Part shown: positions 1-24,900 of the stretch, in pieces | Position numbering within the stretch: the stretch's first letter is position 1 | Layout: each line of letters opens with the position of its first letter | Source of the DNA: Lama guanicoe | Taxonomy: Eukaryota | DNA length: 64,000 bases | Direction of reading: 5' to 3' | NCBI GenBank assembly: GCA_013239625.1 | Contig: MU054575.1 | Span: 185,687 to 249,686 of the forward strand | The notes under the pieces: model-generated | What the model was told of the DNA's origin: nothing | Databases searched by the model: none | What the model saw: only the letters and a program-made list of their open reading frames with translations | Translations under genes and position numbers: made by a program

Positions 1-1110
1 CCCCCCCCGAGAACTCCCACTCACTCCGCCCCGCCCGCCTCGCCTAATCTGGTCTCCCCAGTGCCCTTGACTCCCCTGGGTGCTGTCCTGTCTACCATGC
101 CAGTCCCAGAGGTGAGCGGTGAGGGCGTACAGTGTCCCCAAGTGCCGGGGGCCCTCCCGCACCAGCCCCTGGGCCGCAGTGCCTCGTGGGAACGGCGCGT
201 CCGCAGGCCAGGCCCCCAGCAGCCTCCTTGCTGCGGGAATCTCTCAGGGGCCCACCCTGCGGCCACCGCTCCCTCCAGGTGACAACCCGCTGCGGTTCCC
301 CGCGCACTGCTCCTTCTGTCCCTTTCTCCAGCCCTCGAGGCTCCGGCTCAGGCCGTGGGAGGCCTGGACGGAGCCGCTCCTGTACCTTCTCCTAAATGAA
401 TTGCAGTGGGTGAGGTGGCGGCTGGGGACCCTGCGGTCCTGAGTCCCCTGCCTCGTCCTGTCCGACCCGGGCCTGGAATGCCCCCGCAAGTGCTGGATCT
501 CTGCGGCCCCCTGACACCTCCCTCGCTGGCAGCCCTTCCTCTTCTCCCCGCTACTCTCTCGAAATGCTCTTCCTGCCTGGGACGGCCTGCGGCCCCCAGC
601 CTGCCTGGTCTCAGCTCCCCCTGAGACGGTGTCCCCTGTGCTGCCTGCCCTGCCATCATCCCCGCTCTGCCGGGCAGTCTCCCGCTTCACCTCGCCGGCC
701 TTGCTCCCAGAGCCTCCTGGTGCAGAGGCCAGTGGAGCAAGGCCCAGGGAGGGGAAGGGGACTCACCTGGCCCGGCAGACCGCTGTCTCCACCTGCCCAC
801 GGCTGCCAGCTACACCGCCACGGCCCCTGGCCCCGGGGCGCACCACTCTCCAACTGCCCCTGTCCACCAGCCGCCACGACCTGAAACCAGAATTGACCGG
901 GATGAATGTCTGGCTCCCCCCTCTTCCTCCTGCACCCCCGGCTTGGGCCCCTCACTCTCCAGCCGATGCTATCCTGCCTCCTGGGCACCTGGGAGCCCGC
1001 ACCTCGTCCCCACCAGGCTCCCAGGTGCCCGCCAGCCCTGCCCAAGCCAGCCCCTCAGCCCCTCTCCGCTCCTGCCAGACTCCAGATTCCAAGGTGATCC
1101 TGGGCCCAGG
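1..1110 (-). ncRNA. H19: H19 imprinted lncRNA, most of exon 1 (its 3' end and the downstream exons lie left of the window; the TSS-proximal part is not seen adjacent)
   Basis: The reverse complement contains blocks matching human H19 exon 1 as I recall it: GAGACCAGAtTAGGCGAGGCGGGCGGGGCGGAGTGA (21-56), CCACCTCACCCACtGCAATTCATTTAG (~392-418), GGGGAGCCAGaCATTCATCCCGGTCA (~894-919) and CACCTTGGAATCTGGAGTCTGGCAGGAG (~1069-1096). The miR-675 hairpin is in the expected position and ICR-type CTCF repeats lie upstream. Confidence 0.95.
105..173 (-). ncRNA. MIR675: pre-miR-675 hairpin within H19 exon 1 (5p about 164-142; 3p 132-113)
   Basis: Minus strand reads CCCAGGGGCUGGUGCGGGAGGGCCCCCGGCACUUGGGGACACUGUACGCCCUCACCGCUCACCUCUGGG. 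The 5p arm begins UGGUGCGG. The 3p arm CUGUACGCCCUCACCGCUCA differs by 1 nt from human CUGUAUGCCCUCACCGCUCA. Confidence 0.92.
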
Positions 1111-1226
1111 CACACACCAGCCGATGCTGCCTCCTGGGCACCTGGGAGCCCGCACCTCGTCCCCACCAGGCTCCCAGGTGCCCGCCAGCCCTGCCCAAGC
1201 CAGCCCCTCAGCCCCTCTCCGCTCCT
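961..1226. repeat. Direct duplication of about 110 bp (961-1073 and 1119-1226), each copy with a perfect 15-bp inverted repeat
   Basis: Seen directly: gggcacctgggagcc-N18-ggctcccaggtgccc at 983-1030 and 1136-1183, with shared flanks. Confidence 0.9.
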
Positions 1227-2202
1227 CTCCTGCAACCGTGCTTGGGGCCACCACAAAGCCCACCTCCGCCGGCTCGGTCTAGCGCACGTTCCTCGCCTGT
1301 CCTGGAATTCTCCAAAGAGGGCCTTCCCCGCACCCCTCCTTTGGCATCCTGTACACAGGGCTTGGCATTGTCCCCAAGCCTCCCCTCCCCCCTTCCCCGG
1401 GTTGAAACGGTCATGTCCCCTCAGGGCGGACCGTGCCGTGCAGGCGGCTCCCCGCCCAGCCCCCACCGGGCGCACACTCTGCCCTTGGATGGAAGTCCTA
1501 GCTGGGGCCCCAGGGGCTCAAGTGAGACTTGGGGACGCCTTCTGCCACCACCACGGCTGAGACCGCATTTTACCCCAAGGTCCCAGGGTCCACGGAGAGG
1601 TCCCGCGGGGTGCGCTGGGGGGTCGGGGCTCAGGCTGGGCCCGAGAAAGTGCCCGAGGTCTGCCTGTGTCAGGTGGGCGCCAGCGCCCAGCTCCAGGACC
1701 GTCTAGTTGATGGTGCCTATTGCAAGCACAGCAGGTTTTATGTGGTGGGCTCCCCGTTGTGGCCGGGGCGCCTCGTCCCCTCGCCACCGCGGTCCGTCGT
1801 CTGGACGCGGCACGCCTGCCGTGTCCTGCAGCTCACGGGTGCGCTCTGGTGACAAGCCGTGCAGCCTCACAGCCCTGCCGTGGCCGCCCTATGCACCGCC
1901 GCCCGGAACACGCTGCCGTTCAGTCAGAACAAAGACCTGTGAGCTTCGAGCCCGCCCAGCTACCCCTGGATACCCCGTCCTTGGGGCGGTCACCTTGGCC
2001 TTGAGGGGGTGGGGGGAACTGGGACCCTACAGTCCAAAGGGCTGGGCCACCAAATCTAGGGTGCTGCTGCCATTGGGTGAGGTCACATCTAAACAAGGGA
2101 CCTCGAGCTTTACAGGGTCCCCCGCACCTCGGAGAGAGCCTTGGGGAGACCCTGCTCCTGGGAAGCGCGTGAAGTGCTGCGTGTCCCCTGCCAAACCTGA
2201 GA

Positions 2203-2368
2203 GCCAGCTTTTGCCATGGGTGAACCCCCAAGTTTACAGTGGAAAACCCAGCCTTTGCTATGGGTGAACCCCACATTTACATTCGGAAAACCCCAGGCTT
2301 TGCTATGAGTGGACCCCCAAACTTATTGTGGGAAAACCCAGCCTTTGTCATGGGAGGAGCCCCAAGCT
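2203..2368. repeat. Minisatellite, ~45-bp unit x ~3.7 (ccagcctttgctatgggtgaacccc...ttaca...ggaaaac)
   Basis: Four imperfect units are visible between the promoter region and the first CTCF site. Confidence 0.85.
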
Positions 2369-2446
2369 GGGAAGAGGTAGACCCCCACGTCTGGCCGTGA
2401 GCAGACCGCAGCCTCGGCCAACCTGGCAGTGATGTCCGAGCCTGCG

Positions 2447-2463
2447 CTGCCGCCTCGCGGCCG
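2447..2463 (-). promoter_or_regulatory. ICR CTCF site (CCGCGAGGCGGCAG) with ZFP57 hexamer
   Basis: ctgccgcctcgcggccg in B-repeat context. Confidence 0.85.
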
Positions 2464-2870
2464 CCTCTGGCCCCACACCCACGGCTGCTTGGTGCCACTC
2501 GGTGCGAACGGCCTGTGGTACTGGCCCAAGGCGAGGAGAAGAGACCCCCACAATCCTCTTGCGCTCGGCAGGGCAGCACCCAATACCCTGCTGCTGGAGG
2601 CCCGTGGGAAGGGTCTCCCTCTGAAGCCGAATGCACGTAGCCCGAGGTGTGGGGAGGACTCATTGCTCCCAAGTGCCCCCTCTCCTCTCCGTAACTTCAA
2701 CAGTGCAGCCGAGGGTGACTCAGATGGGGTGACCTGGGATGGCTCGGATGAGCGCCCCATCTTGCTGATGGTCCTTGTGAACCACGCGGTATCCGGCCGG
2801 GTTGGACCCGGCACGCCGTGCAAGTGGATCCCGGTCCCGGCCACCCAGGTCAGAGATGTCCGAGCCTGCA

Positions 2871-2887
2871 CTGCCGCCTCGCGGCCG
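2871..2887 (-). promoter_or_regulatory. ICR CTCF site (CCGCGAGGCGGCAG)
   Basis: ctgccgcctcgcggccg in B-repeat context. Confidence 0.85.
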
Positions 2888-3339
2888 CTTCCATCTTCAC
2901 ATCCACAACCACTTAGCATTGTTTAGGGGCGCGAACAGCTCACAGGGTGGCCCCTCATGCAGGGGGCGGTTCCCAGGGCCCAGTACTGCCGGTGGCCTGT
3001 GCGGCAGGTGTCCCTCCGGAGCTTGGGCTGTGACTCTCGGGTCCCATCGTGTCCTCATCACTCCAGGACACGGGGCCCCACTATTCCCGTATCCCCTCTC
3101 ACCCCATGGCCTTGGACACACGGGGCCATGACCCTAGCGGCAGTGGGACCCACCCCCAGCAGCACATGGGCTCCAGGGCAGACCCACGGTGCTCTATCTG
3201 GGAAACGCACCTCCACGGGCTCGTGAGGTCCCGGAGCACAGCGTGAGGAAGTGACTGGCCACAGAGCACGCTTGCCCGTCGAGATCCCCACCTTTAATGG
3301 TCCCTAGGCACTAGGGTGCCCCTGCACCCTACATTGGTG

Positions 3340-3393
3340 GCGGCACTTGCGCGAACCGCCGCCCTGCCGCGGCAGAACCCGGAGGCAGCGGCA
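3340..3393. promoter_or_regulatory. Cluster of four ZFP57 (TGCCGC) motifs; repeated at 5587-5640, 6535-6588 and 8613-8666
   Basis: gcggca (3340), palindromic tgccgcggca (3365-3374, two overlapping motifs), gcggca (3388). Confidence 0.75.
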
Positions 3394-3399
3394 GCTGCC

Positions 3400-3482
3400 T
3401 GGGCCCTAGCCCGGGCTTTTTCTAGCTGGAGCAGCCCCGCCCAGAGTTCCCGCCCCTGCTCCGCCAGCCAATCAGAGCGGGG
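3400..3482 (-). promoter_or_regulatory. H19: H19 core promoter (TATA-like TAGAAAAA 3424-3417, GC boxes 3435-3456 incl. E2F-like TTCCCGCC, CCAAT 3468-3472)
   Basis: ctagcccgggctttttctagctggag...ccccgcccagagttcccgcccctgc...gccaatcagagc matches the conserved human/mouse H19 minimal promoter as I recall it. It is directly followed by the H19 upstream sequence (ctggaattctccaaaga...). Confidence 0.8.
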
Positions 3483-4450
3483 ACCGTGCTTGGGGCCACC
3501 ACAAAGCCCACCTCCGCCGGCTCGGTCTAGCGCACGTTCCTCGCCTGTCCTGGAATTCTCCAAAGAGGGCCTTCCCCGCACCCCTCCTTTGGCATCCTGT
3601 ACACAGGGCTTGGCATTGTCCCCAAGCCTCCCCTCCCCCCTTCCCCGGGTTGAAACGGTCATGTCCCCTCAGGGCGGACCGTGCCGTGCAGGCGGCTCCC
3701 CGCCCAGCCCCCACCGGGCGCACACTCTGCCCTTGGATGGAAGTCCTAGCTGGGGCCCCAGGGGCTCAAGTGAGACTTGGGGACGCCTTCTGCCACCACC
3801 ACGGCTGAGACCGCATTTTACCCCAAGGTCCCAGGGTCCACGGAGAGGTCCCGCGGGGTGCGCTGGGGGGTCGGGGCTCAGGCTGGGCCCGAGAAAGTGC
3901 CCGAGGTCTGCCTGTGTCAGGCGGGCGCCAGCGCCCAGCTCCAGGACCGTCTAGTTGATGGTGCCTATCGCAAGCACAGCAGGTTTTATGTGGTGGGCTC
4001 CCCGTTGTGGCCGGGGCGCCTCGTCCCCTCGCCACCGCGGTCCGTCGTCTGGACGCGGCACGCCTGCCGTGTCCTGCAGCTCACGGGTGCGCTCTGGTGA
4101 CAAGCCGTGCAGCCTCACAGCCCTGCCGTGGCCGCCCTATGCACCGCCGCCCGGAACACGCTGCCGTTCAGTCAGAACAAAGACCTGTGAGCTTCGAGCC
4201 CGCCCAGCTACCCCTGGATACCCCGTCCTTGGGGCGGTCACCTTGGCCTTGAGGGGGTGGGGGGAACTGGGACCCTACAGTCCAAAGGGCTGGGCCACCA
4301 AATCTAGGGTGCTGCTGCCATTGGGTGAGGTCACATCTAAACAAGGGACCTCGAGCTTTACAGGGTCCCCCGCACCTCGGAGAGAGCCTTGGGGAGACCC
4401 TGCTCCTGGGAAGCGCGTGAAGTGCTGCGTGTCCCCTGCCAAACCTGAGA

Positions 4451-4616
4451 GCCAGCTTTTGCCATGGGTGAACCCCCAAGTTTACAGTGGAAAACCCAGC
4501 CTTTGCTATGGGTGAACCCCACATTTACATTCGGAAAACCCCAGGCTTTGCTATGAGTGGACCCCCAAACTTATTGTGGGAAAACCCAGCCTTTGTCATG
4601 GGAGGAGCCCCAAGCT
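4451..4616. repeat. Second copy of the ~45-bp minisatellite (part of the 2248-bp duplication)
   Basis: Same sequence as 2203-2368 at offset 2248. Confidence 0.85.
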
Positions 4617-4694
4617 GGGAAGAGGTAGACCCCCACGTCTGGCCGTGAGCAGACCGCAGCCTCGGCCAACCTGGCAGTGATGTCCGAGCCTGCG

Positions 4695-4711
4695 CTGCCG
4701 CCTCGCGGCCG
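4695..4711 (-). promoter_or_regulatory. ICR CTCF site (duplicate of 2447)
   Basis: ctgccgcctcgcggccg. Confidence 0.8.
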
Positions 4712-5118
4712 CCTCTGGCCCCACACCCACGGCTGCTTGGTGCCACTCGGTGCGAACGGCCTGTGGTACTGGCCCAAGGCGAGGAGAAGAGACCCCCACA
4801 ATCCTCTTGCGCTCGGCAGGGCAGCACCCAATACCCTGCTGCTGGAGGCCCGTGGGAAGGGTCTCCCTCTGAAGCCGAATGCACGTAGCCCGAGGTGTGG
4901 GGAGGACTCATTGCTCCCAAGTGCCCCCTCTCCTCTCCGTAACTTCAACAGTGCAGCCGAGGGTGACTCAGATGGGGTGACCTGGGATGGCTCGGATGAG
5001 CGCCCCATCTTGCTGATGGTCCTTGTGAACCACGCGGTATCCGGCCGGGTTGGACCCGGCACGCCGTGCAAGTGGATCCCGGTCCCGGCCACCCAGGTCA
5101 GAGATGTCCGAGCCTGCA

Positions 5119-5135
5119 CTGCCGCCTGGCGGCCA
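5119..5135 (-). promoter_or_regulatory. ICR CTCF site (CCGCCAGGCGGCAG)
   Basis: ctgccgcctggcggcca. Confidence 0.85.
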
Positions 5136-5650
5136 CTTCTGTCTCCTCACCACAATTGCTCGGCACTGTTTGGGGGCGCGACCAGCTCGCAGGGTGGCCC
5201 CTCGTGCAGGGGGCGGTTCCCAGGGCCCAGTACTGCCGGTGGCCTGTGCGGCAGGTGTCCCTCCGGAGCTTGGGCTGTGACTCTCGGGTCCCATCGTGTC
5301 CTCATCACTCCAGGACACGGGGCCCCACTATTCCCGTATCCCCTCTCACCCCATGGCCTTGGACACACGGGGCCATGACCCTAGCGGCAGTGGGACCCAC
5401 CCCCAGCAGCACATGGGCTCCAGGGCAGACCCACGGTGCTCTATCTGGGAAACGCACCTCCACGGGCTCGTGAGGTCCCGGAGCACAGCGTGAGGAAGTG
5501 ACTGGCCACAGAGCACGCTTGCCCGTCGAGATCCCCACCTTTAATGGTCCCTAGGCACTAGGGTGCCCCTGCACCCTACATTGGTGGCGGCACTTGCGCG
5601 AACCGCCGCCCTGCCGCGGCAGAACCCGGAGGCAGCGGCACGCCCAGATC

Positions 5651-5690
5651 TTTAGCATCTCAAACACCAGAACTGCATGGAGATGTTAAT
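5651..5690. promoter_or_regulatory. Dyad octamer (OCT/POU) element of ICR A-type repeat, copy 1
   Basis: tttagcat (rc ATGCTAAA) at 5651-5658 and atgttaat at 5683-5690, resembling the dyad Oct-binding sequence known in mouse/human ICR1. Confidence 0.75.
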
Positions 5691-6066
5691 GACTGGCTGT
5701 TAGGGTCTGAGGTTCACACTGAAGGCAGATTTGGGCTCAGTAAAAAGCCCGGAGTTCTGGAGTACCGCCTTTGGTGTGCCGCCGTCCTCGTACCTGGCAG
5801 GCGTGACGTGGGACCCACACCGCGGGACCTCAGACGGGGACCCATGGCTGAAGCTGCGATGTGGCCCGACCTGGGGACTGGGGTAGCACGGACGAGCGCC
5901 CCATGTCCCTGAAGTCCCTCGTGGACCACCGCGGTATCTGGCTTGAGCGGACCCAGGAGGCTGTGCGGGTGGACCTGTAATGCTGTGCGAGTGGATCCGG
6001 GACGCTGTTCGGACAGACCCGGGACACCACGCGGGTGAACCCCAGCTGAAGATGTGTGAGCCTGCA

Positions 6067-6083
6067 CTGCCGCCTGGCGGCCA
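6067..6083 (-). promoter_or_regulatory. ICR CTCF site (CCGCCAGGCGGCAG)
   Basis: gatgtgtgagcctgcactgccgcctggcggccacttc, the closest match to the human B-repeat as I recall it. Confidence 0.88.
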
Positions 6084-6598
6084 CTTCTGTCTCCTCACCA
6101 CAATTGCTCGGCACTGTTTGGGGGTGCGACCAGCTCACAGGGTGGCCCCTCGTGCAGGGGGCGGTTCCCAGGGCCCAGTACTGCCGGTGGCCTGTGCGGC
6201 AGGTGTCCCTCCGGAGCTTGGGCTGTGACTCTCGGGTCCCATCGTGTCCTCATCACTCCAGGACACGGGGCCCCACTATTCCCGTATCCCCTCTCACCCC
6301 ATGGCCTTGGACACACGGGGCCATGACCCTAGCGGCGGTGGGACCCACCCCCAGCAGCACATGGGCTCCAGGGCAGACCCACGGTGCTCTATCTGGGAAA
6401 CGCACCTCCACGGGCTCGTGAGGTCCCGGAGCACAGCGTGAGGAAGTGACTGGCCACAGAGCACGCTTGCCCGTCGAGATCCCCACCTTTAATGGTCCCT
6501 AGGCACTAGGGTGCCCCTGCACCCTACATTGGTGGCGGCATTTGCGCGAACCGCCGCCCTGCCGCGGCAGAACCCGGAGGCAGCGGCACACCCAGATC

Positions 6599-6638
6599 TT
6601 TAGCATCTCAAACACCAGAACTGCATGGAGATGTTAAT
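6599..6638. promoter_or_regulatory. Dyad octamer element, copy 2
   Basis: Identical to 5651-5690 at offset 948. Confidence 0.75.
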
Positions 6639-6970
6639 GACTGGCTGTTAGGGTCTGAGGTTCACACCGAAGGCAGATTTGGGCTCAGTAAAAAGCCCGG
6701 AGTTCTGGAGTACCGCCTTTGGTGTGCCGCCGTCCTCGTACCTGGCAGGCGTGACGTGGGACCCACACCGCGGGACCTCAGACGGGGACCCATGGCTGAA
6801 GCTGCGATGTGGCCCGACCTGGGGACTGGGGTGGCTCGGACGAGTGCCTCATCTCTCTGATGACCCTCGTGGACCACTGCGGTATCTGGCGTGAGCGGAT
6901 CCGGGATGCCGCTAGCGTGGACCCCGGACGCTGTGTGGGCGAACCCCGGTCGATGATGTGTGAGCCAGCA

Positions 6971-6987
6971 CTGCCGCCTCGCGGCCG
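6971..6987 (-). promoter_or_regulatory. ICR CTCF site (CCGCGAGGCGGCAG)
   Basis: gatgtgtgagccagcactgccgcctcgcggccg. Confidence 0.85.
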
Positions 6988-7352
6988 CTGCTGTCTTTAC
7001 ACAGACAACAACCCAGCACCTTTCAGAGGTGCAGTGGGCCAGTGGGGTTGGCCGAAGACCAAGGGGAGAGACCCTGAAATACTTTTGCATTGGGCAAGGC
7101 AGCCCCCAGGACCCCTGGGCTGCTGGAGTCCCTGTGGGAAGGGTTTCCTTCTGGACCTGGTCTCCTGTCCCTGGACTTCCATCCCCTGGGCTCCCAGCCA
7201 GGTTCACTCCAGGGCAATGGGATGGCTGGATGAGCGCCCCATCTTGCTGATGGTCCTTGTGAACCACGCGGTATCCGGCCGGGTTGGACCCGGCACGCCG
7301 TGCAAGTGGATCCCGGTCACGGCCACCCAGGTCAGAGATGTCCGAGCCTGCA

Positions 7353-7369
7353 CTGCCGCCTGGCGGCCA
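7353..7369 (-). promoter_or_regulatory. ICR CTCF site (copy of 5119 module)
   Basis: ctgccgcctggcggcca; close to the assembly gap. Confidence 0.7.
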
Positions 7370-7758
7370 CTTCTGTCTCCTCACCACAATTGCTCGGCAC
7401 TGTTTGGGGGCGCGACCAGCTCGCAGGGTGGCCCCTCGTGCAGGGGGCGGTTCCCAGGGCCCAGTACTGCCGGTGGCCTGTGCGGCAGGTGTCCCTCCGG
7501 AGCTTGGGCTGTGACTCTCGGGTCCCATCGTGTCCTCATCACTCCAGGACACGGGGCCCCACTATTCCCGTATCCCCTCTCACCCCATGGCCTTGGACAC
7601 ACGGGGCCATGACCCTAGCGGCGGTGGGACCACTCGTGAGGTAGCACAGCGTGAGGAAGTGACTGGCCACAGAGCACGCTTGCCCGTCGAGATCCCCACC
7701 TTTAATGGTCCCTAGGCACTAGGGTGCCCCTGCACCCTACATTGGTGGCGGCGCGGCA

Positions 7759-8230
7759 NNNNNNNNNNNNNNNNNNNNNNNNNNNNNNNNNNNNNNNNNN
7801 NNNNNNNNNNNNNNNNNNNNNNNNNNNNNNNNNNNNNNNNNNNNNNNNNNNNNNNNNNNNNNNNNNNNNNNNNNNNNNNNNNNNNNNNNNNNNNNNNNNN
7901 NNNNNNNNNNNNNNNNNNNNNNNNNNNNNNNNNNNNNNNNNNNNNNNNNNNNNNNNNNNNNNNNNNNNNNNNNNNNNNNNNNNNNNNNNNNNNNNNNNNN
8001 NNNNNNNNNNNNNNNNNNNNNNNNNNNNNNNNNNNNNNNNNNNNNNNNNNNNNNNNNNNNNNNNNNNNNNNNNNNNNNNNNNNNNNNNNNNNNNNNNNNN
8101 NNNNNNNNNNNNNNNNNNNNNNNNNNNNNNNNNNNNNNNNNNNNNNNNNNNNNNNNNNNNNNNNNNNNNNNNNNNNNNNNNNNNNNNNNNNNNNNNNNNN
8201 NNNNNNNNNNNNNNNNNNNNNNNNNNNNNN
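7759..8230. other. Assembly gap (472 N)
   Basis: Run of N. Confidence 1.
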
Positions 8231-8676
8231 TGCAGGGGGCGGTTCCCAGGGCCCAGTACTGCCGGTGGCCTGTGCGGCAGGTGTCCCTCCGGAGCTTGGG
8301 CTGTGACTCTCGGGTCCCATCGTGTCCTCATCACTCCAGGACACGGGGCCCCACTATTCCCGTATCCCCTCTCACCCCATGGCCTTGGACACACGGGGCC
8401 ATGACCCTAGCGGCGGTGGGACCCACCCCCAGCAGCACATGGGCTCCAGGGCAGACCCACGGTGCTCTATCTGGGAAACGCACCTCCACGGGCTCGTGAG
8501 GTCCCGGAGCACAGCGTGAGGAAGTGACTGGCCACAGAGCACGCTTGCCCGTCGAGATCCCCACCTTTAATGGTCCCTAGGCACTAGGGTGCCCCTGCAC
8601 CCTACATTGGTGGCGGCACTTGCGCGAACCGCCGCCCTGCCGCGGCAGAACCCGGAGGCAGCGGCACGCCCAGATC

Positions 8677-8716
8677 TTTAGCATCTCAAACACCAGAACT
8701 GCATGGAGATGTTAAT
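8677..8716. promoter_or_regulatory. Dyad octamer element, copy 3
   Basis: Identical sequence after the gap. Confidence 0.7.
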
Positions 8717-9048
8717 GACTGGCTGTTAGGGTCTGAGGTTCACACTGAAGGCAGATTTGGGCTCAGTAAAAAGCCCGGAGTTCTGGAGTACCGCCTTTGG
8801 TGTGCCGCCGTCCTCGTACCTGGCAGGCGTGACGTGGGACCCACACCGCGGGACCTCAGACGGGGACCCATGGCTGAAGCTGCGATGTGGCCCGACCTGG
8901 GGACTGGGGTGGCTCGGACGAGTGCCTCATCTCTCTGATGACCCTCGTGGACCACTGCGGTATCTGGCGTGAGCGGACCCGGGATGCCGCTAGCGTGGAC
9001 CCCGGACGCTGTGTGGGCGAACCCCGCTCGATGATGTGTGAGCCAGCA

Positions 9049-9065
9049 CTGCCGCCTCGCGGCCG
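9049..9065 (-). promoter_or_regulatory. ICR CTCF site (copy of 6971 module)
   Basis: ctgccgcctcgcggccg. Confidence 0.8.
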
Positions 9066-12000
9066 CTGCTGTCTTTACACAGACAACAACCCAGCACCTT
9101 TCAGAGGTGCAGTGGGCCAGTGGGGTTGGCCGAAGACCAAGGGGAGAGACCCTGAAATACTTTTGCATTGGGCAAGGCAGCCCCCAGGACCCCTGGGCTG
9201 CTGGAGTCCCTGTGGGAAGGGTTTCCTTCTGGACCTGGTCTCCTGTCCCTGGACTTCCATCCCCTGGGCTCCCAGCCAGGTTCACTCCAGGGCAAGGGGA
9301 CCCCTTGTGCCTCCAAGCATCTGCTGTCACCTTACTGTTGACCCAGGTGACAGGGAGCCGAGTCAGGTCCCATCCCTGTGGTCAGGCTCCCTGTATTGCG
9401 TGGGCTCCTGGGCAGACCCAGAGCGCTCCTGTTGGTTCTGTCTGCTCGGGCCACAGCACCAGGACCCGGAAGTCCTCCCGGTTCAGATCCGCACTCTGCT
9501 CGTGCACCTCTTCTCTTTACTGACTCTCGGCTGGGGAGGATTTGGGGATATTTGGTGACAGCCCGTGACCTCAGGCTGTTTGCCTCCTGATGGGATATTT
9601 GCATTCTATGGACGGAGTGGAGGAGAGGTGGGCGGCAGCTTCCACTGCTGGAGAGGACTCCCTAGCGGAGGGATGGCCAGGGCTCCCCAGGGCTCCCAGC
9701 ACCCGGGCCAGGTCTGGTCTTGGCTGCAGTAGAGTGGGTGGCTCGGGGCTGTGATTCCCAGGCGGGACAGCACCAAGACGAGCTGGGTAGAGCCCCCGCC
9801 CAGGTGCCCAGAGCCTGCAGATGTGGGCGGGCCAGGGAGGCGGGCTGTCGTGGGCAGACCTCTTCTCCCACAGGCACTCTCGGCCCTTGTGCTGCGGGCA
9901 TCTCCAGCCCTGCACGGCTTGACCGGCATCTCACTGCCTCAGCCTCCATCACCCCCACACCCCCAGGAGCAAGATGGAGAGCTCTCCGGAGACACAGCCC
10001 TAGGAAGGAACCCTGCCACACAGAACAAGGTCGCCTCCCAAGCGTCTGCCTGCTGCAACTCATGGGAGAGCCCGGCCCAGTAGCTGCGCCCCCCTCTGGC
10101 CCTCACCTGGGCACTGGGCCACCTAGGGCTACCACCTGACACTGTGCTGCTCCCGTCCAACTGCTCAGCCCTCAGAAAGGTACTCAGACGGCAGGCACCG
10201 CGCCCAGCCCCGGGGACACGGCGTGACTGCCTCGGCAGCTGGGCTGGGGTGCGCAGTGGGCTGTCCAGCCCTTCCGGGCAGGGTCAGCTCCAGGGCAGGT
10301 GCCCGCGGGAAGGGCTGCTGGCGTTTGGAAGCTAGAGGAAAGTGCTGGCTGGTGACGTCTGAGAAGTCACTCTGCAGTCCCCTGCTGGCTTAAGACTGGG
10401 TGATGAGGGCCTCCCAACGCGAGTGACTAGAAAGGGTGTCAGAGCAATGCCCTTCCTCACCCACTGGGGTGAGGCCGGAGCACAGGGGGCGTCTTCGACG
10501 CTGATGCCCGGCAGGCACAGGGGTGACAAGTTGGGTCACCTTGCAGACTTCTCTGACGAGCTGGGAATGACTCCCTGGAGTTCCAAGTGGGGGGCCCGGG
10601 GCTCCATTTAGGCCCACGAGGACATAAGGCCATGGTCACATGGGCTGTCCTGGAAGGAAACTGCAGAAGGCCCCACCCTGAGCCGGGCAGAGGTCCAGGA
10701 GCATCACTGCGTCCGGAGGGAGGCAGAGACAGGAGCACGACGGGGGACAGCCAGGCGCGGCAGAGCCTTCAGGATAGGGTGATGAGCCGGTGTCACGTGC
10801 TGAGGACAGCCGAGGCTGCGGCGGGCAGCCCAGGTCCTGTGGGGCCACGGAGAGTGCGGACCGGGGCGGCGGGGCACAGGCCGGCTGCCGTCACCCGTCT
10901 GTGCTCCTCGGCCCACGCCCGGCCCCTGCCAGCGCTTGTGCCCTGATCCCAGCCCATCAAACCCTTGGAGGCTCCAGTCGAAGAACTAACGCGTCCCCAG
11001 CCTCTGTCCCGGCAGCCCCACATGTGCCTCTAGGCCCCAAGCCCAGCCACTGTTCCCTCTACCTTGCCTCCCCCACGTTCCTTTCTTAGAGGTGGCCTCA
11101 TCACCCTGTCCCTTGCTCTCTCCCAGCCTCCAAATCCAGTCAGTAAGAAGTTAGTCACTTCTACCTCCATGAGCTGGTCCATCTCCCTGCCCTTCCCCTC
11201 CACCCTGCCAGCCCCAGGGCCAAATTCATCAGCAAGACTCAGTGATACCTCCACGGGGTACCAGTCTCCCACCAGGGTGCCAGCCCCCCGCCTGAGTGCC
11301 GTACAGCTTTCCACCAGACTAGCCTCCCACGCAGTGCCAGCCTCCTACCTGGGCATCAGTCTCTCGCCCAGGTGCCAGCCCCTCTTCTGGGTACCAACCT
11401 CCCACCCAGCGCTGTGTCCAGGCCCAGCCACACCAGCTGACCGTCCGCCATCGTCTGAACCTGGATCTGCCACCTCCCCGGAACCCGGCCGGCACAGACT
11501 CTCCCCTCCCTCCCTGTGTGGCCCCCGCGTCCGGGTACAATCGTGTGGCCATCCTAATGCCTCTGGGGGCCCTGGCTCCCGCCTCCTCCTCCTGCTGAAG
11601 AAACTGCTCTCCTCTTCCTCAGCTGCTGCAGGACAGGTCCTGGTCCTGGTGCCCGTTAGACCGAACAGCAGCCCCCCTCAGCCTCCTCGCTGCACACCTG
11701 GCCCCTCCTTCCTGCAGTGCCTCTGGGTAGCACACACATTTCACACTGGAAACTTTGAGAGCTTTTTTAAGCAAACCCAAGTCTTCTCATCTGACACTCA
11801 AAACCTCAGTGTGTGGGCGTCAGGTCACTCCCCTGCCCTCCCCAGAACTGCAGCGTCCCCTCTGCTCCCCAGACAGGGCTGGATGCCTCGGGCCCCACTC
11901 CGGGGGCGGCAGGGCTGAGGAGCAGGAGCCTGTTGGGTGAACCCCTTGGTATTTGTTCCAACCGCATACACCATGCACGGCTAATTGCCCCCCACTTCCT

Positions 12001-12195
12001 TACACACCCATCAAATCTGTTATTAGAAGCTTCTAGTTGCTGTATTGTTATGGTGTTACACTTACCAGCCTCCCTTGCAGCTAGGTGTGCCCGTGGGACT
12101 GGTTCCTGACCTCAGGGACGTGGCCATCCTCCCAGAGGTCCGGACCTCTGTGGCCCCTTCCCCCTGGCTCTGATGTGCATGGATAGTCAGACCCT

Positions 12196-12645
12196 GAAGT
12201 TCCCTGGGGCTGCTGTATCCAAGTCCCACAGACTGGGGGGCACTAGAATAACAGGAATTTAATCATTCACAGTTCAAGAGGCCAGACGTCCAAGATCAGG
12301 GTGTCAGCAGCAGAGGTCCCCTCTGCGAGCTCTGAGGGAGAATCTGTTCCAGGCCCCTCCCCCAGCTTCTGGCCGTGACCCACGGCCCTTGGGGGTCTGT
12401 GGCTGGTGGCCACAGCACTCCCGTCTCTGCCCGGGCCTTCACGTGGCCTTCTCTCTGTGTCTGTGGTTCTCTTTTGACAAGGCGCCAGTCACACAGGCCG
12501 CAGGGCACTTCCTGCTCCAGGAGGACCCCGTCAGTGATCTCTGTCACGACCCTGTTTTCAAATCAGGTCCCATTCTGCAGTGCGGGGGTTAGGGCTCCGA
12601 CCTCTGCATCCGGGCGAGGGAGAGGGACAGAATTCAGCCCACTGC
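12196..12645 (-). mobile_element. ERVL-MaLR solo LTR (MLT1C/D-like)
   Basis: Characteristic ggggctgctgta...caggaattta...cacagttc...gaggccaga.gtccaagatcagggtgtcagcag...gagggagaatctgttcca...ttcaaat.aggtc.cattctg. Confidence 0.8.
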
Positions 12646-13433
12646 ACACCCAAGGTGGAGACCCTGTGTCAGGGGCAGAGCTGCCAGACTGGTGGCGGGC
12701 CTGTCACTCTCGGCCTCATGACCTCACCGCACAGGCAAGCCAGTTCGGCCGGCTCGGGGCCCCGCTCGTGTTCCTTGCTGCCCGGCTGCACCTCCATCCA
12801 CTCTGATACTTGCCTGAGACCAGGCGCCGTGGGCACGCAGAGGTGGCCAGGCTCTGGGTGCGGGCGCAGGTGCAGGTGGGGAGCTCCGGGGGAGCTGAGC
12901 ACAGACAGCATCCAGGCAGGGCTGCTGGGCTGGGAGGAGCCGGCGTGAGTCTGGGAGCCAGCGAGCAGGTGGACTAGGGACAAGGGAGCCGCACTGAGAC
13001 CTGCTCCCCTTGTTTGTCTCAGGTTGCTCTGCTCTGGAGCTGAGGCTCTGCTGACAGCTGGAAAAGCTGTACGTTCTCACCTTGGGAGGGCACCTCTGCT
13101 GCCCAGCCTGGGTTGAGCGAGCTCACCCCGGGGAGGTTGGACACCCGAGCTGAGCGGCCGCATCCGTCGTGGCGCAGATCCCCTGGGGCCCTCCCCCAGG
13201 CTGCCAGCCCCACACCCCCGACCCTCCTCTTCCTCCCTCTGCGACCCACCCAGAGACCCACCGGACTCGGCTGTGAGGGGTAGGATCCCAACCCCAGCGG
13301 CTTCAGCTGGATCCCAGAACTGCGTCCCCCGGGTAGGTGTCCCTTGGCAGCCCTTGGCCCTGATGCCTGTTTATTCTTGCTTCTGGAGGGTTATCCAAGC
13401 AGCCCCAGGACAGCAGCCTTCCAGTGCAGCACC

Positions 13434-21900: not shown

Positions 21901-24900
21901 CCAAAAAAGACCTTTAAAGGTTGAGACGGGAAATAACAAGACAGCCTTTCCCAGTCTCCCTCCCTCTCTGTGTCTCTGTGCCCCTCTCCCTCCCCTCGCA
22001 TCATAAAACAAGGAATTTATTTTTCACTGCGCCTGGGGTTGCAGACGGCTGTGGCTGTCCTGCTGTGTCGGGCTGGGTTTATTTGGGGTGGGGGCGGGCA
22101 GGGGGTGCTTTCTGTTTTCTTTTGCTTTTGCAAGGAAAGGGCGGGCAGGGGCTGGTGGACCCGCAGGGCGCCCCTCCCTCCCCCACTCCGAGGGGGGCTT
22201 TCCTTCCCCCTTCACTTCCCTTTTCCCTTTTGGGGGCTGAGGTTAAACAGAGGGCGCCCAGGGCCCGTGACCTTTACCCTCTGACATCTTTGAGCTCAGG
22301 AGGGCTTTGATGTCTTAACTGCCTGCCTCACACCAGTCACTCTCTCCCCCCACCAGGAGCAGGACCCTCTGCAGTTGCCCTTTCTGGGCCCCCCAGGTCC
22401 CAGGAAATTGGCCTCACAAATAAAGCCAGCGAGGGACTACCTCGTCCAGGTGGCCTGGAGCTCGGCCACCTCCCCTCCTTCCTCGCTGTCCCCAGAGCCC
22501 CCGCCTACCGTCCCTCCTGCCCACACATGGCCTCACGTGCCCCCCTGTTATCCCACCTGTCCAGCCTTCCTCTGCCCATGGGCTGCCACCTCCTGGGACC
22601 TTCTCAAGGAGGCACACAGCCCCAGTGGCCTCTGGTCCCCAGCCCCAGAGCCAGCTTGGTGGGCACCCTGTTCTGCCCCGTTTCCCTCCAGTGGCAGGAA
22701 CCCACAGCGGTACTCAGAGGTCAAGCAGGCCGGGGCCCAAGTCGCTGATGTGACCAGGTGGAACACTCAGTGGGAGAGAGGCTGAGGCCCAAGAGGGGAC
22801 ACCCCGGCCTTCTCACCTGTGGCTCCAGGGAGCAGAGCTGGCCACCAGGCTGGGCTAAGGCCTGCCTGTGCATCCTGCGTGCCTTCCTGGGCTGGCCGTG
22901 CGGGATGCCAGGTGGGCACTGGGCACGACATCGGGCTGCCCTCTGCCCTCCGCTGCCCCTCTCCAAAGCCAGAGCTCCCCCTGGCCCCAGTTACCCCTCA
23001 GCCTGGCCACCACGAGGCCCCTGAGGTCCAGAGGTCCCTCCTCCACTTCCCCAGGGAATGCTTGGAGCCCTCAAGGATGCTGTGGGGTAGCCTTTCTGGG
23101 TTCCCCCATCACTGCCCACAGCAAGGGCCACCAAGCCCCTCGGGAGCCCGGCCCTGCTCCCCAGCACCAGCACAACTGCCTGATCTGGGCTCATTTTCCA
23201 AGGGTTTCCTCTGCACCCCGCCGAACGGGCCTTGTGTGCTGGGCTGGCACCTCGGCTGGCCTCCCTCCATGCCTGTCACCAAGCGGTGGGCTCCAGGGGT
23301 CTAGGGAGAGTGTGAGGGGTGGAGGCCCTCTGGCCCCTAGAAATGACCTGCATCTGTGGTCTTGAGACCAGGGTGCAGGTGGGACCCCTCGTCTCCTTGG
23401 GGAGGGCAGGGAACCTGGCTGCAAGTGGGTTTCAGCCCAGACAGAGAGAGAAAAAAGGAGATAGAAAGGGTAAGCTGATGGGGTGGGGAGAGGGCAGAAG
23501 CCCCCGGGGGAAGGGGGCCACTGCCGGGAGTGGAGGCCAGAAAGGGCCCGACAGCATCCTGCAGAGTAAGACCCAAGGCAGAGAGCGTGGCACTGACAGG
23601 GACACACGCGGCCTCTTCCGATGGAGCCACGTGCCCACATCTGTCCCCAGACCAGCCCCCTGAACATGCAGCCAGGACCCCCCCCCCGGCCGGCCTCCCC
23701 ACCTCAGCCCTGCCGGGGGCCTTGGCATATCCGTGTGCGGACCAGAGGTGGGTGCCCACGGGGCCAGCTGCCCACATTGCCTGGCGTGGGTGCCCCCTTG
23801 CTGCGCCGACCTGAAGCCCTTCACCTCCGTCCTCAGACACGGAGAGAGGGCCGCCCAGCCCGCCCCAAGCTCGGAGCCCATGGAACACACCAGCAGGGAC
23901 AGTTCCCTGGGACTGGGGTTCAAGGCTGAAGGCCCGTCTCCCACCGCCTCGGGTGTCCGCCTTGGCCTGAGACTCGGGCCCCTGGCCTGCCCAACCTGAC
24001 CCACGCCCGGAAGCAGGGCCGCGTCCCCTGCGTCCCCTGCCTCCACGCGGACGGTGGCCTCGGGTGGGCTCTGGATCGTGCGTCTTGTCACAAATCCTGT
24101 GACCACATTGGTGAATGGAACGAGCTGAGTGGGGCTGGGACTGGGGCCAGCAGGGCCCCCGGAAGTGAGGGGTGAAGCCCGGACGTGGCCCCAGTCCTCT
24201 CAGGCTCTACCCACCTGTCCCCACATGCCACCGCCCCAGGCCCTCCCCTGCCCTTCTCTTGTGCCCTCCGCGGCCTCACCTCTGCCCCGGTGTCTCCTGG
24301 CCCTCTTTGGCCCCTTCTGGCCAGGGTACCTCTGGGGGTGTCTTCCAGGCCGCCCTGCATGCCCTCCACAACCTAGCATGTACGAGGCACTGGGGTGGGG
24401 GCTGGGTGGAAGCCTCCTGGCGGCGCCAGGTGGCCGCAGGGCCTGGTGGATGGGCAGAGGCTGGGGGCAGGGCCCATTGGGCCCGAGGATGCCAGCGTGG
24501 CCCCCTCGCCCTCACCCCCCGCAGTCCAGCCTCTGCCAGGTTTCTGAGGGCCATTGTTATTAATATTATTATTACAGCCGCTGCAAAAACACTGCGCTAA
24601 GCCCCGCAAGTGATTTATATAGCGTGTGGCCTTATTGATTAGGCCAACTTTCCACGGTGCTGGGGGAGGCGGCGCCCTGGCTCCGGGCATCTCTGATCCA
24701 TGGGGGCCGCCCACCGGGTGCCTCTGGGTAGACTCCGAAGTCGCGGCCCCTCCCACCCTGCCAGAGGCTCCCTCGCTGGGGAAGAAGCAGCCCCTGGCCC
24801 TGAGAGGGCCCTGTCTGAGGGGGAGGCAGCCCCTGTGCCAGCGAGACCCTCATCTGAGGGTGGAGAGGCCGCTCTGCCTCGAGGCACGGCCGGCGTGCGC

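What the first reader, a model, noticed from the sequence alone, without database searches (positions are those of the whole stretch)
2430..9295. Expanded, homogenised modular ICR1: at least 8 CTCF sites, 3 octamer dyads, 4 ZFP57 clusters
Seen: module order (B = CTCF repeat, X = ZFP57-cluster segment, A = octamer segment) is B1-B2'-X-[promoter]-B1-B2-X-A-B3-X-A-B4-B2-X(deleted)-gap-X-A-B4. All CTCF motifs share one orientation. Known: human ICR1 has seven CTCF sites in diverged A/B repeats and mouse has four. Inference: even after discounting suspect copies, a core of B1-B2-X-A-B3-X-A-B4 remains, with almost identical X-A units at a 948-bp period. This suggests a young CTCF+ZFP57+OCT cassette under concerted evolution and possibly a copy-number-variable ICR. 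It is the best candidate for undescribed biology in the window.
Basis: partly seen in the sequence, partly recalled or inferred. Interest (0 to 1): 0.75.

Follow-up and report, generated by a model that had tools for sequence, protein, structure and literature searches.

The report
H19 imprinting control region, falsely expanded
This is the imprinting control region upstream of the H19 gene of a camelid; about half of its apparent repeat expansion is an assembly error, which leaves an ordinary region with four CTCF motifs and one internal duplication whose two copies are almost identical.

Summary

Two large blocks are not supported by contigs of four public runs from four studies.
- Block 1235-3393 copies 3483-5640. 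It separates the H19 promoter from exon 1. In 3 of 4 runs the contig over the promoter continues left of 3394 into letters found nowhere in the window.
- Block 7223-9300 contains the gap and copies 4983-7222. In 4 of 4 runs the B4 contig runs from 7222 straight into 9301-9330.

The supported layout is promoter, B1, B2, X-A, B3, X-A, B4: four CTCF motifs, two X-A units and two TGCCGC clusters. It resembles mouse in site number and human in A/B repeat style.

The "octamer dyads" are 2-mismatch matches of no statistical weight.

B2 is a B2'/B3 recombinant. B2' appears at about half depth in 2 of 4 runs, which points to segregating gene conversion. Contigs cannot settle the unit number; one run has raised depth.

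Interest is modest.

The parts
105..173 (-). mir-675-like hairpin in H19 exon 1. It fixes H19 on the minus strand.
   Evidence: RF00897, 52 bits, E 2.8e-7, below the gathering score of 86, minus strand.
851..918 (.). H19 conserved region 2 (H19 exon 1).
   Evidence: RF01973, 85.2 bits. Rfam reports it on the plus strand, opposite to mir-675.
1235..3393 (.). Unsupported duplicate block, a copy of 3483-5640. It carries the B1 copy (2445-2464) and the B2' variant (2869-2888; divergent stretch 2880-2957). It most likely represents the second haplotype, placed in tandem by mistake.
   Evidence: 99.1% identity, with 17 of 19 differences clustered in 2880-2957; the contig runs unbroken through 3482|3483; in 3 of 4 runs the letters left of 3394 are unlike 3393 and before; B2' contigs (2850-2987 and 2850-2955) stand at about half depth, in X1 and X9 only.
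3394..3482 (-). H19 core-promoter-like stretch: an inverted CCAAT box, two GC boxes and an A-rich box.
   Evidence: Read directly. The likeness to the human H19 promoter is recalled; contigs continue from here into letters absent from the window. All 4 runs read other letters at 3425 and 3432.
3483..4662 (.). Spacer between the promoter and the first CTCF repeat, including a 45-bp tandem repeat (3.6 copies) at 4452-4613.
   Evidence: tandem repeat; one contig covers 3394-5127/5139.
4693..4712 (-). B1 CTCF-type motif (core CCGCGAGGCGGCAG).
   Evidence: 1 mismatch to the cattle consensus.
5117..5136 (-). B2 CTCF-type motif (core CCGCCAGGCGGCAG), a recombinant of B2' on its left and B3 on its right.
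5110..5884 (.). Homogenised unit, copy 1: the right part of the B core, X (5205-5640) and A (5641-5884).
   Evidence: 6 differences in 775 bp against 6058-6832, while the flanks are about 84% identical.
5587..5640 (.). TGCCGC (ZFP57-type hexamer) cluster of X copy 1: 4 hexamers in 54 bp.
5651..5690 (.). Inverted pair of degenerate octamers in A copy 1 (also at 6599-6638).
   Evidence: 2 mismatches each, not above the window background.
6065..6084 (-). B3 CTCF-type motif.
   Evidence: a B3-specific contig (5855-6087) is present in 4 of 4 runs.
6058..6832 (.). Homogenised unit, copy 2: X (6153-6588), A (6589-6832) and the TGCCGC cluster at 6535-6588.
   Evidence: one contig covers it, at 1.6 to 2.4 times the depth of the flanking contigs.
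6969..6988 (-). B4 CTCF-type motif, an exact match to the cattle consensus. The B4 tail runs to 7222.
   Evidence: the contig over 6803/6806-7222 runs on into 9301-9330 in 4 of 4 runs.
7223..9300 (.). Unsupported block. It holds a B2 copy and an X with an ~84-bp loss (7223-7758), the gap (7759-8230), and a copy of X-A-B4 (8231-9300 = 6153-7222). The block is colinear with 4983-7222.
   Evidence: no contig bridges 7222|7223 or the loss at 7631-7643.
9597..9604 (-). Perfect octamer ATGCAAAT, 531 bp beyond the distal CTCF motif.
   Evidence: 2 matches in the window against 0.35 expected.

Best explanation
The region is the camelid counterpart of the H19/IGF2 imprinting control region. It lies about 1.3 to 3.8 kb upstream of H19, which is on the minus strand.

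Its supported layout is: promoter (3394-3482), spacer, B1, B2, X-A, B3, X-A, B4, then the unique sequence from 9301. That gives four H19-type CTCF motifs, all pointing towards H19, and two 775-bp units that are 99.2% alike and sit inside older repeats that are about 75-85% alike.

The further copies in the window (1235-3393 and 7223-9300) are most likely a second haplotype of the same region that was not purged and was stitched in tandem, partly around the gap. That doubles the motif counts and splits the H19 promoter from exon 1.

The near identity of the two units, and the fact that B2 is B2' on its left and B3 on its right, are best explained by gene conversion between the repeats. One conversion allele is still segregating.

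The function is inferred from what is established for this region in mouse and human. CTCF binds the unmethylated maternal copy and insulates IGF2 from the enhancers beyond H19. The methylated paternal copy is kept methylated through ZFP57 at TGCCGC. Nothing about methylation or binding was shown here.
For: Position and strand:
- mir-675 lies on the minus strand at 105-173.
- H19_2 lies at 851-918.
- A promoter-like stretch lies at 3394-3482.

Motifs:
- 8 CTCF motifs, all on the minus strand, with chance expectations of 0.33 and 0.00.
- 18 TGCCGC in the 2560 bp of 4663-7222, against 27 in the 54.7 kb of 9301-64000. CpG observed/expected is 0.60 against 0.38-0.40.

Artefact reading (runs X1, X3, X9 and X10, four organisms and four studies):
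- One contig covers 3394-5127/5139 without a break at 3482|3483. In 3 of 4 runs it continues left of 3394 in letters unlike the window. X10's contig starts at 3412.
- That 30-letter continuation is absent from the whole window.
- The B4 contig continues behind 7222 in 4 of 4 runs, with letters identical to 9301-9330.
- No joints and no bridging contigs are seen at 3393|3394 or 7222|7223.
- Contig depths are similar for 3394-5127 and for B4 (8.98/10.1, 12/13.5, 24/27.5, 10.2/11.6). For X-A they are 14.9, 22.2, 52.3 and 26.
- The B3-specific contig is present in 4 of 4 runs. Because B3 is flanked on both sides by the shared unit, at least two units must exist.

Conversion:
- 6 differences in 775 bp, against 12 in the next 74 bp.
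- (alignment A1): B2 is identical to B2' in columns 1-42 and to B3 from there on, apart from 2 columns.
- B2' contigs stand at 4.5 against 8.98 (X1) and 13.9 against 24 (X9). The main contig of these two runs stops at 5127, one base before the first B2/B2' difference.
Against: - The runs are kept as contigs, not reads. The tool itself warns that holes prove nothing, that rare variants are dropped and that the depth is no copy number. My reading of 1x and 2x is therefore only indicative.
- Adding a third B3-X-A unit would create no new junction, so contigs cannot exclude it. X10 has raised depth on both X-A (2.4x) and B3 (1.6x).
- Three versions of the B2 region stand in the window (C+B2', C+B2, A+B2). 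A diploid source should give two. The A at 7319 is the letter that X3 and X10 read at 5085. Block 7218-7758 is therefore not simply the other haplotype of one animal.
- I do not know which run, if any, is the source animal.
- The promoter identity and the meanings of the motifs rest partly on recall.
Confidence: 0.8

Rival explanations
1. The array is real as assembled: a camelid control region expanded to eight or more CTCF sites, with the promoter embedded in it.
For: The letters are in the window. The B2' variant of block 1235-3393 exists in real data (X1 and X9). Three versions of the B2 region are more than one diploid animal should give.
Against::
- No contig supports 3393|3394 or 7222|7223.
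- Contigs pass 3482|3483 and go from 7222 to 9301 unbranched, in 4 of 4 runs.
- The contigs over 3394-5127 and over B4 have the same depth as each other, not twice it.
- B2' stands at about half depth and stops the main contig exactly at the first difference, as an allele would.

As assembled, the H19 promoter would drive transcription into an X module, and the first exon-1 letters seen in the contigs are missing from the window.
Confidence: 0.05
2. The 949-bp B-X-A unit varies in number between animals (2 in most, 3 in some), as human IC1 repeats do through unequal recombination. The assembly's excess partly reflects a real longer allele.
For::
- Depth ratios of X-A to the flanks range from 1.6 to 2.4.
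- In X10 both X-A (26 against 10.2-11.6) and B3 (17.1) are raised together, as a 2/3 heterozygote would give.
- Adding a unit makes no new junction, so the contig topology is blind to it.

The near-identical 775-bp units are a good substrate for unequal exchange.
Against: - The tool warns that contig depth is no copy number.
- X1's ratio of 1.6 together with a B3 ratio of 0.9 shows that noise of the same size exists.
- The window's own extra copies are joined through B4|preB2 and X|promoter, which are not the joins a unit gain would make.
Confidence: 0.2
3. The two X-A units are alike because the duplication is very young, not because of gene conversion.
For: 99.2% identity over 775 bp is what a duplication of the last few million years would show. 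I have no outgroup to date it.
Against: - A fresh tandem duplication of a 949-bp unit should be uniformly alike over all 949 bp. Here identity drops sharply to 84% (12 differences in 74 bp) and then to 75-85% in the remaining ~170 bp.
- B2 is a clean B2'/B3 mosaic, with both forms present in the runs.
Confidence: 0.2

Closest known systems
[quoted passage not shown]
   Same: - It lies upstream of H19.
- It is built of two kinds of direct repeats in two reiterated units: two 450-bp A repeats and several 400-bp B repeats, the B repeats carrying the CTCF target sites (bioRxiv 10.1101/250407, abstract and section 4 part 1; PMC3542864 passages).
- Here too there are two A-like modules and a B-type repeat that carries the CTCF motif.
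- The Sox-Oct motifs of human lie in the A repeats (PMC3855764 passage).
   Different: - Human has six to seven CTCF target sites (PMC3542864 passage). Here four are supported.
- The human unit is A plus three B repeats. Here the unit is B core, X and A (949 bp), with an extra X segment rich in TGCCGC.
- Homology of the camelid A or X modules to the human A repeats was not tested, because no reference sequence was on hand.
- The octamers in the camelid A modules are degenerate.
Mouse H19 ICR
   Same: - It has four CTCF sites upstream of H19.
- It has a Sox-Oct pair between sites 2 and 3 and a consensus octamer 450 bp upstream of site 1 (PMC3855764 passages).
- Here there are four supported motifs, A modules between B2/B3 and B3/B4, and a perfect octamer 531 bp beyond the distal motif.
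   Different: - No A/B repeat units of this kind are described for mouse in the passages I read.
- The camelid has a near-identical internal duplication.
- Sequence similarity was not tested. PMC6599137 (passages) reports that the human and mouse control regions are not recognisable by BLASTN outside primates and rodents.
Cattle H19 DMR
   Same: The published 20-letter CTCF consensus of the cattle DMR (PMC9241299 passage) is matched exactly at B4 and B2', with 1 mismatch at B1 and with 2 at B2 and B3. The cattle region also holds ZFP57-site clusters and several predicted CTCF sites (same passage).
   Different: The cattle DMR is placed about 6 kb upstream of the H19 promoter in that passage. 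Here the motifs lie 1.3 to 3.6 kb upstream. The repeat layout of cattle was not compared.

Membership tests
H19/IGF2 imprinting control region (IG-DMR) | [quoted passage not shown] | tested here: met
   H19 is on the minus strand (mir-675 at 105-173; H19_2). A promoter-like stretch lies at 3394-3482 (the likeness is recalled). The motifs lie at 4693-6988. IGF2 itself was not sought in the window.
H19/IGF2 imprinting control region (IG-DMR) | Several CTCF target sites of the H19 type, in one orientation. | tested here: met
   8 in the assembly, 4 in the contig-supported layout, all on the minus strand, 0.33 expected; exact or near matches to the cattle consensus. The generic CTCF consensus (recalled) does not hit them at 1 mismatch or fewer.
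H19/IGF2 imprinting control region (IG-DMR) | Enrichment of the methylated-DNA ZFP57 hexamer TGCCGC. | tested here: met
   18 in the 2560 bp of 4663-7222, against 27 in the 54.7 kb of 9301-64000. There are two clusters of 4 in 54 bp. That the hexamer is the ZFP57 site is recalled.
H19/IGF2 imprinting control region (IG-DMR) | SOX-OCT motifs between CTCF sites. | tested here: inconclusive
   no octamer with 1 mismatch or fewer in the A modules; 2-mismatch matches occur 3.6 times per kb throughout the window. Perfect octamers stand only at 9597 and 52772. The published probe sequences are in a supplement that I could not see.
H19/IGF2 imprinting control region (IG-DMR) | Methylation of the paternal allele set in the male germ line. 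| not testable with these tools
   No methylation data. A CpG observed/expected of 0.60 against 0.38-0.40 in the flanks is only compatible with it.
H19/IGF2 imprinting control region (IG-DMR) | CTCF binding and enhancer blocking on the maternal allele. | not testable with these tools
   No binding data.
Human-type modular IC1 (A/B repeat units) | Two reiterated units, each with an A repeat and B repeats. | tested here: met
   two B core-X-A units at an offset of 949, plus B1 and B4. B3 contigs in 4 of 4 runs require at least two units. Common descent of the modules with the human A and B repeats was not tested.

The most novel reading that the evidence does not exclude
The 949-bp CTCF-X-A unit of the camelid H19 control region is an actively recombining cassette. 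One conversion that replaced the CpG-bearing core of CTCF site 2 (B2', CCGCGAGG...) with the B3 form (CCGCCAGG...) is still segregating. Some animals may carry three units instead of two. This would be natural variation in the number and methylation sensitivity of insulator sites at a growth-controlling imprinted locus, in a livestock species.
Probability: 0.25. Interest if true: 0.45.

Novelty: new member of a known kind. Interest (0 to 1): 0.25.

Why it matters
Practical point:
- This assembly misrepresents the H19 locus. The promoter is cut off from exon 1, the start of exon 1 is missing, and the control region is roughly doubled.
- Motif counts, CpG-island calls, primer designs or methylation assays based on it would be wrong.

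Biological points:
- The supported layout gives a first sketch of a camelid H19 control region. In the literature I could search, such regions outside primates and rodents are said to be unrecognisable by similarity (PMC6599137, passages).
- The region combines the mouse number of CTCF motifs with a human-like repeat-unit style.
- The B2/B2' pair is a natural test of whether losing the central CpG of one CTCF site changes allele-specific binding.

Tried and rejected
- Generic CTCF consensus (recalled) at 1 mismatch or fewer: 5 matches against 4.2 expected, none in the region. It is of no use here.
- Octamer scans. At 1 mismatch or fewer, nothing lies in the A modules. At 2 mismatches or fewer the hits are background. 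I therefore drop the "dyad" as evidence.
- The control-region modules have no copies elsewhere in the window (no BLAST hit outside 1235-9400).
- Rfam reports H19_2 on the plus strand. I rejected that as the gene's strand because mir-675 is on the minus strand and the promoter-like stretch reads on the minus strand.
- Papers on a camelid H19 control region:
  - 11 papers hold all four terms, 6 were listed, none on camelids by title.
  - 1,319 papers hold 3 of 6 terms, 20 were listed, none about H19 in camelids.
  - These are weak searches. I claim only that I found none.
- One search gave nothing useful.
- Earlier notes of the scan gave two sibling notes on this window and nothing on assembly habits.
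- I considered an unequal crossover instead of conversion for B2. It would change the unit number, which the layout does not show, so I prefer conversion.
- Two 18-letter contig matches at 2176-2193 and 7123-7140 (the same 6392-letter contig in X3, and the like in X1 and X9) were set aside as chance.
- Homology to the human or mouse modules, dating with an outgroup, and any read-level test of 7700-9300 could not be done.
- Supplements were closed. The probe table of PMC3855764 may bear on the octamer question.

Full report
WHAT IS IN THE WINDOW

The window has one N run, 7759-8230. A self-comparison of 1-13000 shows that the finding is built from a few large, almost identical blocks:
- 1235-3393 = 3483-5640 (99.1% over 2159 bp)
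- 6153-7222 = 8231-9300 (99.4% over 1070 bp; the second copy starts at the first letter after the gap)
- 4983-5397 = 7218-7631 (99.3%)
- 5092-5958 = 6041-6906 (97.3%, offset 949)

Older, weaker repeats (74-90% identity) link the stretches around the CTCF motifs.

- CCGCNNGGNGGCAG gives 9 matches in the window against 0.33 expected. Eight lie in 2447-9062, all on the minus strand.
- The 20-letter CTCF consensus reported for the cattle H19 DMR (PMC9241299, passages) matches at those same eight places with 0 to 2 mismatches.
- TGCCGC gives 66 matches against 38.8 expected, and 38 of the 66 lie in 2430-9295, with clusters of four in 54 bp at the end of each X module.

The octamer claim does not hold up:
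- No octamer with 1 mismatch or fewer lies in an A module.
- The two 2-mismatch octamers per module are of a kind found 3.6 times per kb across the window.

WHERE H19 IS

Rfam finds H19 conserved region 2 at 851-918. It also finds a mir-675-like hairpin at 105-173 on the minus strand (52 bits, below the gathering score; E 2.8e-7). H19 therefore reads leftwards.

The 89 unique letters at 3394-3482 that separate the two big copies carry, on the minus strand, a CCAAT box, two GC boxes and an A-rich box. From recall, they resemble the human H19 core promoter. As assembled, this promoter fires into an X module rather than into exon 1. A sibling note of the scan (s1-863148) had seen the same displacement.

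TEST WITH PUBLIC RUNS

Twenty runs of 8 studies hold 1700-7699, all kept as contigs. I laid four of them, from four organisms and four studies.

(1) The promoter side.
- One contig covers 3394-5127 (X1, X9) or 3394/3412-5139 (X3, X10) without a break at 3482|3483.
- In 3 of 4 runs it continues left of 3394 in letters unlike the window. X10's contig starts at 3412.
- That 30-letter continuation occurs nowhere in the window, even with 3 mismatches.

(2) The B4 side.
- One contig covers 6803/6806-7222.
- In 4 of 4 runs it continues behind 7222 with letters identical to 9301-9330.

(3) No joint or bridging contig supports 3393|3394, 7222|7223 or the ~84-bp loss at 7631-7643.

(4) Contig depths.
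- They are alike for the 3394-5127 contig and the B4 contig (8.98/10.1, 12/13.5, 24/27.5, 10.2/11.6).
- They are higher for the X-A contig (14.9, 22.2, 52.3, 26).
- The tool warns that contig depth is no copy number, so I use this only as an indication of about two X-A copies.

(5) A B3-specific contig (5855/5858/5886-6087) is present in 4 of 4 runs. B3 is flanked on both sides by the shared unit, so any haplotype that carries it has at least two units.

RESULT

The supported layout is: exon 1, promoter 3394-3482, spacer, B1 (4693), B2 (5117), X-A, B3 (6065), X-A, B4 (6969), then 9301 onward. That gives four CTCF motifs, two A modules and two TGCCGC clusters.

Blocks 1235-3393 and 7218-9300 are colinear with 3483-5640 and 4983-7222. 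Together they amount to a second copy of the whole region. I infer that this is an unpurged second haplotype stitched in tandem.

THE GAP

- The left flank ends at the X position that corresponds to 5591, plus six ragged letters. The right flank restarts X at its first position. They are not continuous within one module.
- By the register of the other copy, 561 letters would be needed where 478 stand (6 letters plus 472 N).

WHAT REMAINS OF THE IDEA

The two units are 99.2% alike over 775 bp (5110-5884 against 6058-6832, 6 differences). Identity falls to 84% in the next 74 bp (12 differences). This is the pattern of a conversion tract inside an older repeat, not of a fresh 949-bp duplication.

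Of the 19 differences between 1235-3393 and 3483-5640, 17 are packed into 2880-2957.

The alignment of the B cores shows that B2 equals B2' up to a point inside the CTCF core and equals B3 from there on, apart from 2 columns. The conversion replaced the CCGCGAGG core with CCGCCAGG.

B2' is real. Contigs identical to it exist in X1 and X9 at about half the flank depth. In those two runs the main contig stops one base before the first B2/B2' difference. In X3 and X10 it reads on with the B2 letters. B2 and B2' therefore look like alleles, and homogenisation looks ongoing.

Copy-number variation stays open:
- An added B3-X-A unit would make no new junction.
- X10 shows raised depth on both X-A and B3.
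- X1 shows that noise of the same size exists.

UNEXPLAINED

Three versions of the B2 region stand in the window. The third (7218-7758) carries at 7319 the letter that X3 and X10 read at 5085. That block is therefore not simply the other haplotype of one animal.

HOW IT LIKELY WORKS

The following is inferred from what is established in mouse and human (PMC6599137 and PMC3855764, passages) and is not shown here:
- CTCF on the unmethylated maternal copy blocks IGF2 from the enhancers beyond H19.
- The paternal copy is methylated and is kept so through ZFP57.
- Octamer and SOX sites help to keep the maternal copy unmethylated.

Supporting features here are the motif density and a CpG observed/expected of 0.60 against 0.38-0.40 in the flanks.

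COMPARISON WITH WHAT IS KNOWN

- Human IC1 has two reiterated units with two 450-bp A repeats and several 400-bp B repeats (bioRxiv 10.1101/250407, abstract and section 4 part 1). It has six to seven CTCF target sites (PMC3542864, passages).
- Mouse has four CTCF sites, a Sox-Oct pair between sites 2 and 3, and a consensus octamer 450 bp upstream of site 1 (PMC3855764, passages).
- The camelid has the mouse number of sites, a human-like unit style, and a perfect octamer 531 bp beyond B4.
- PMC12958509 (passages) added only that the human region has three OCT4/SOX2 sites.
- I found no paper on a camelid H19 control region (both weak searches).

VERDICT

The expansion is an assembly artefact. 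The core is a real but ordinary member of a known kind of element, with a modestly interesting trace of ongoing conversion.

Noticed in passing
window 3425 and 3432: Within the H19 promoter-like stretch, all 4 laid runs read other letters than the window (G>A and C>T). These are probably assembly errors or private variants of the source.
   Followed up: no
window 971-1073 and 1124-1226: A 103-bp stretch of H19 exon 1 is repeated at an offset of 153 with 99% identity. It lies outside the stretch laid on reads, so it may be real or another assembly duplicate.
   Followed up: no
window 1234|1235: The start of H19 exon 1, as seen in the contigs left of 3394, is absent from the whole window. The assembly has therefore lost part of exon 1 at this join.
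   Followed up: partly
window 4452-4613 (copy at 2204-2365): A 45-bp tandem repeat, 3.6 copies, 79% matches, lies between the promoter and the first CTCF motif. A 22-bp repeat lies at 5949-6025, just before B3.
   Followed up: no
window 24037-24050: A ninth H19-type CTCF motif (CCGCGTGGAGGCAG) lies on the same strand, about 20 kb upstream of the H19 promoter. It could be a conserved intergenic CTCF site.
   Followed up: no
window 851-918 and 105-173: Rfam places H19_2 on the plus strand and mir-675 on the minus strand of the same exon. The H19_2 model seems to be built on the strand opposite to the RNA. The mir-675 hit is well below its gathering score (52 against 86).
   Followed up: partly
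window 9597-9604: One of only two perfect ATGCAAAT octamers in the 64 kb (0.35 expected) lies 531 bp beyond the distal CTCF motif. This parallels the mouse octamer 450 bp upstream of CTCF site 1 (PMC3855764 passage).
   Followed up: partly
window 7218-7758: This block carries a third version of the B2 region (A at 7319), a 1-bp gap, an ~84-bp loss at 7632-7642 and a ragged end at the N run. It is more than a diploid source should give, and its origin is unresolved.
   Followed up: partly
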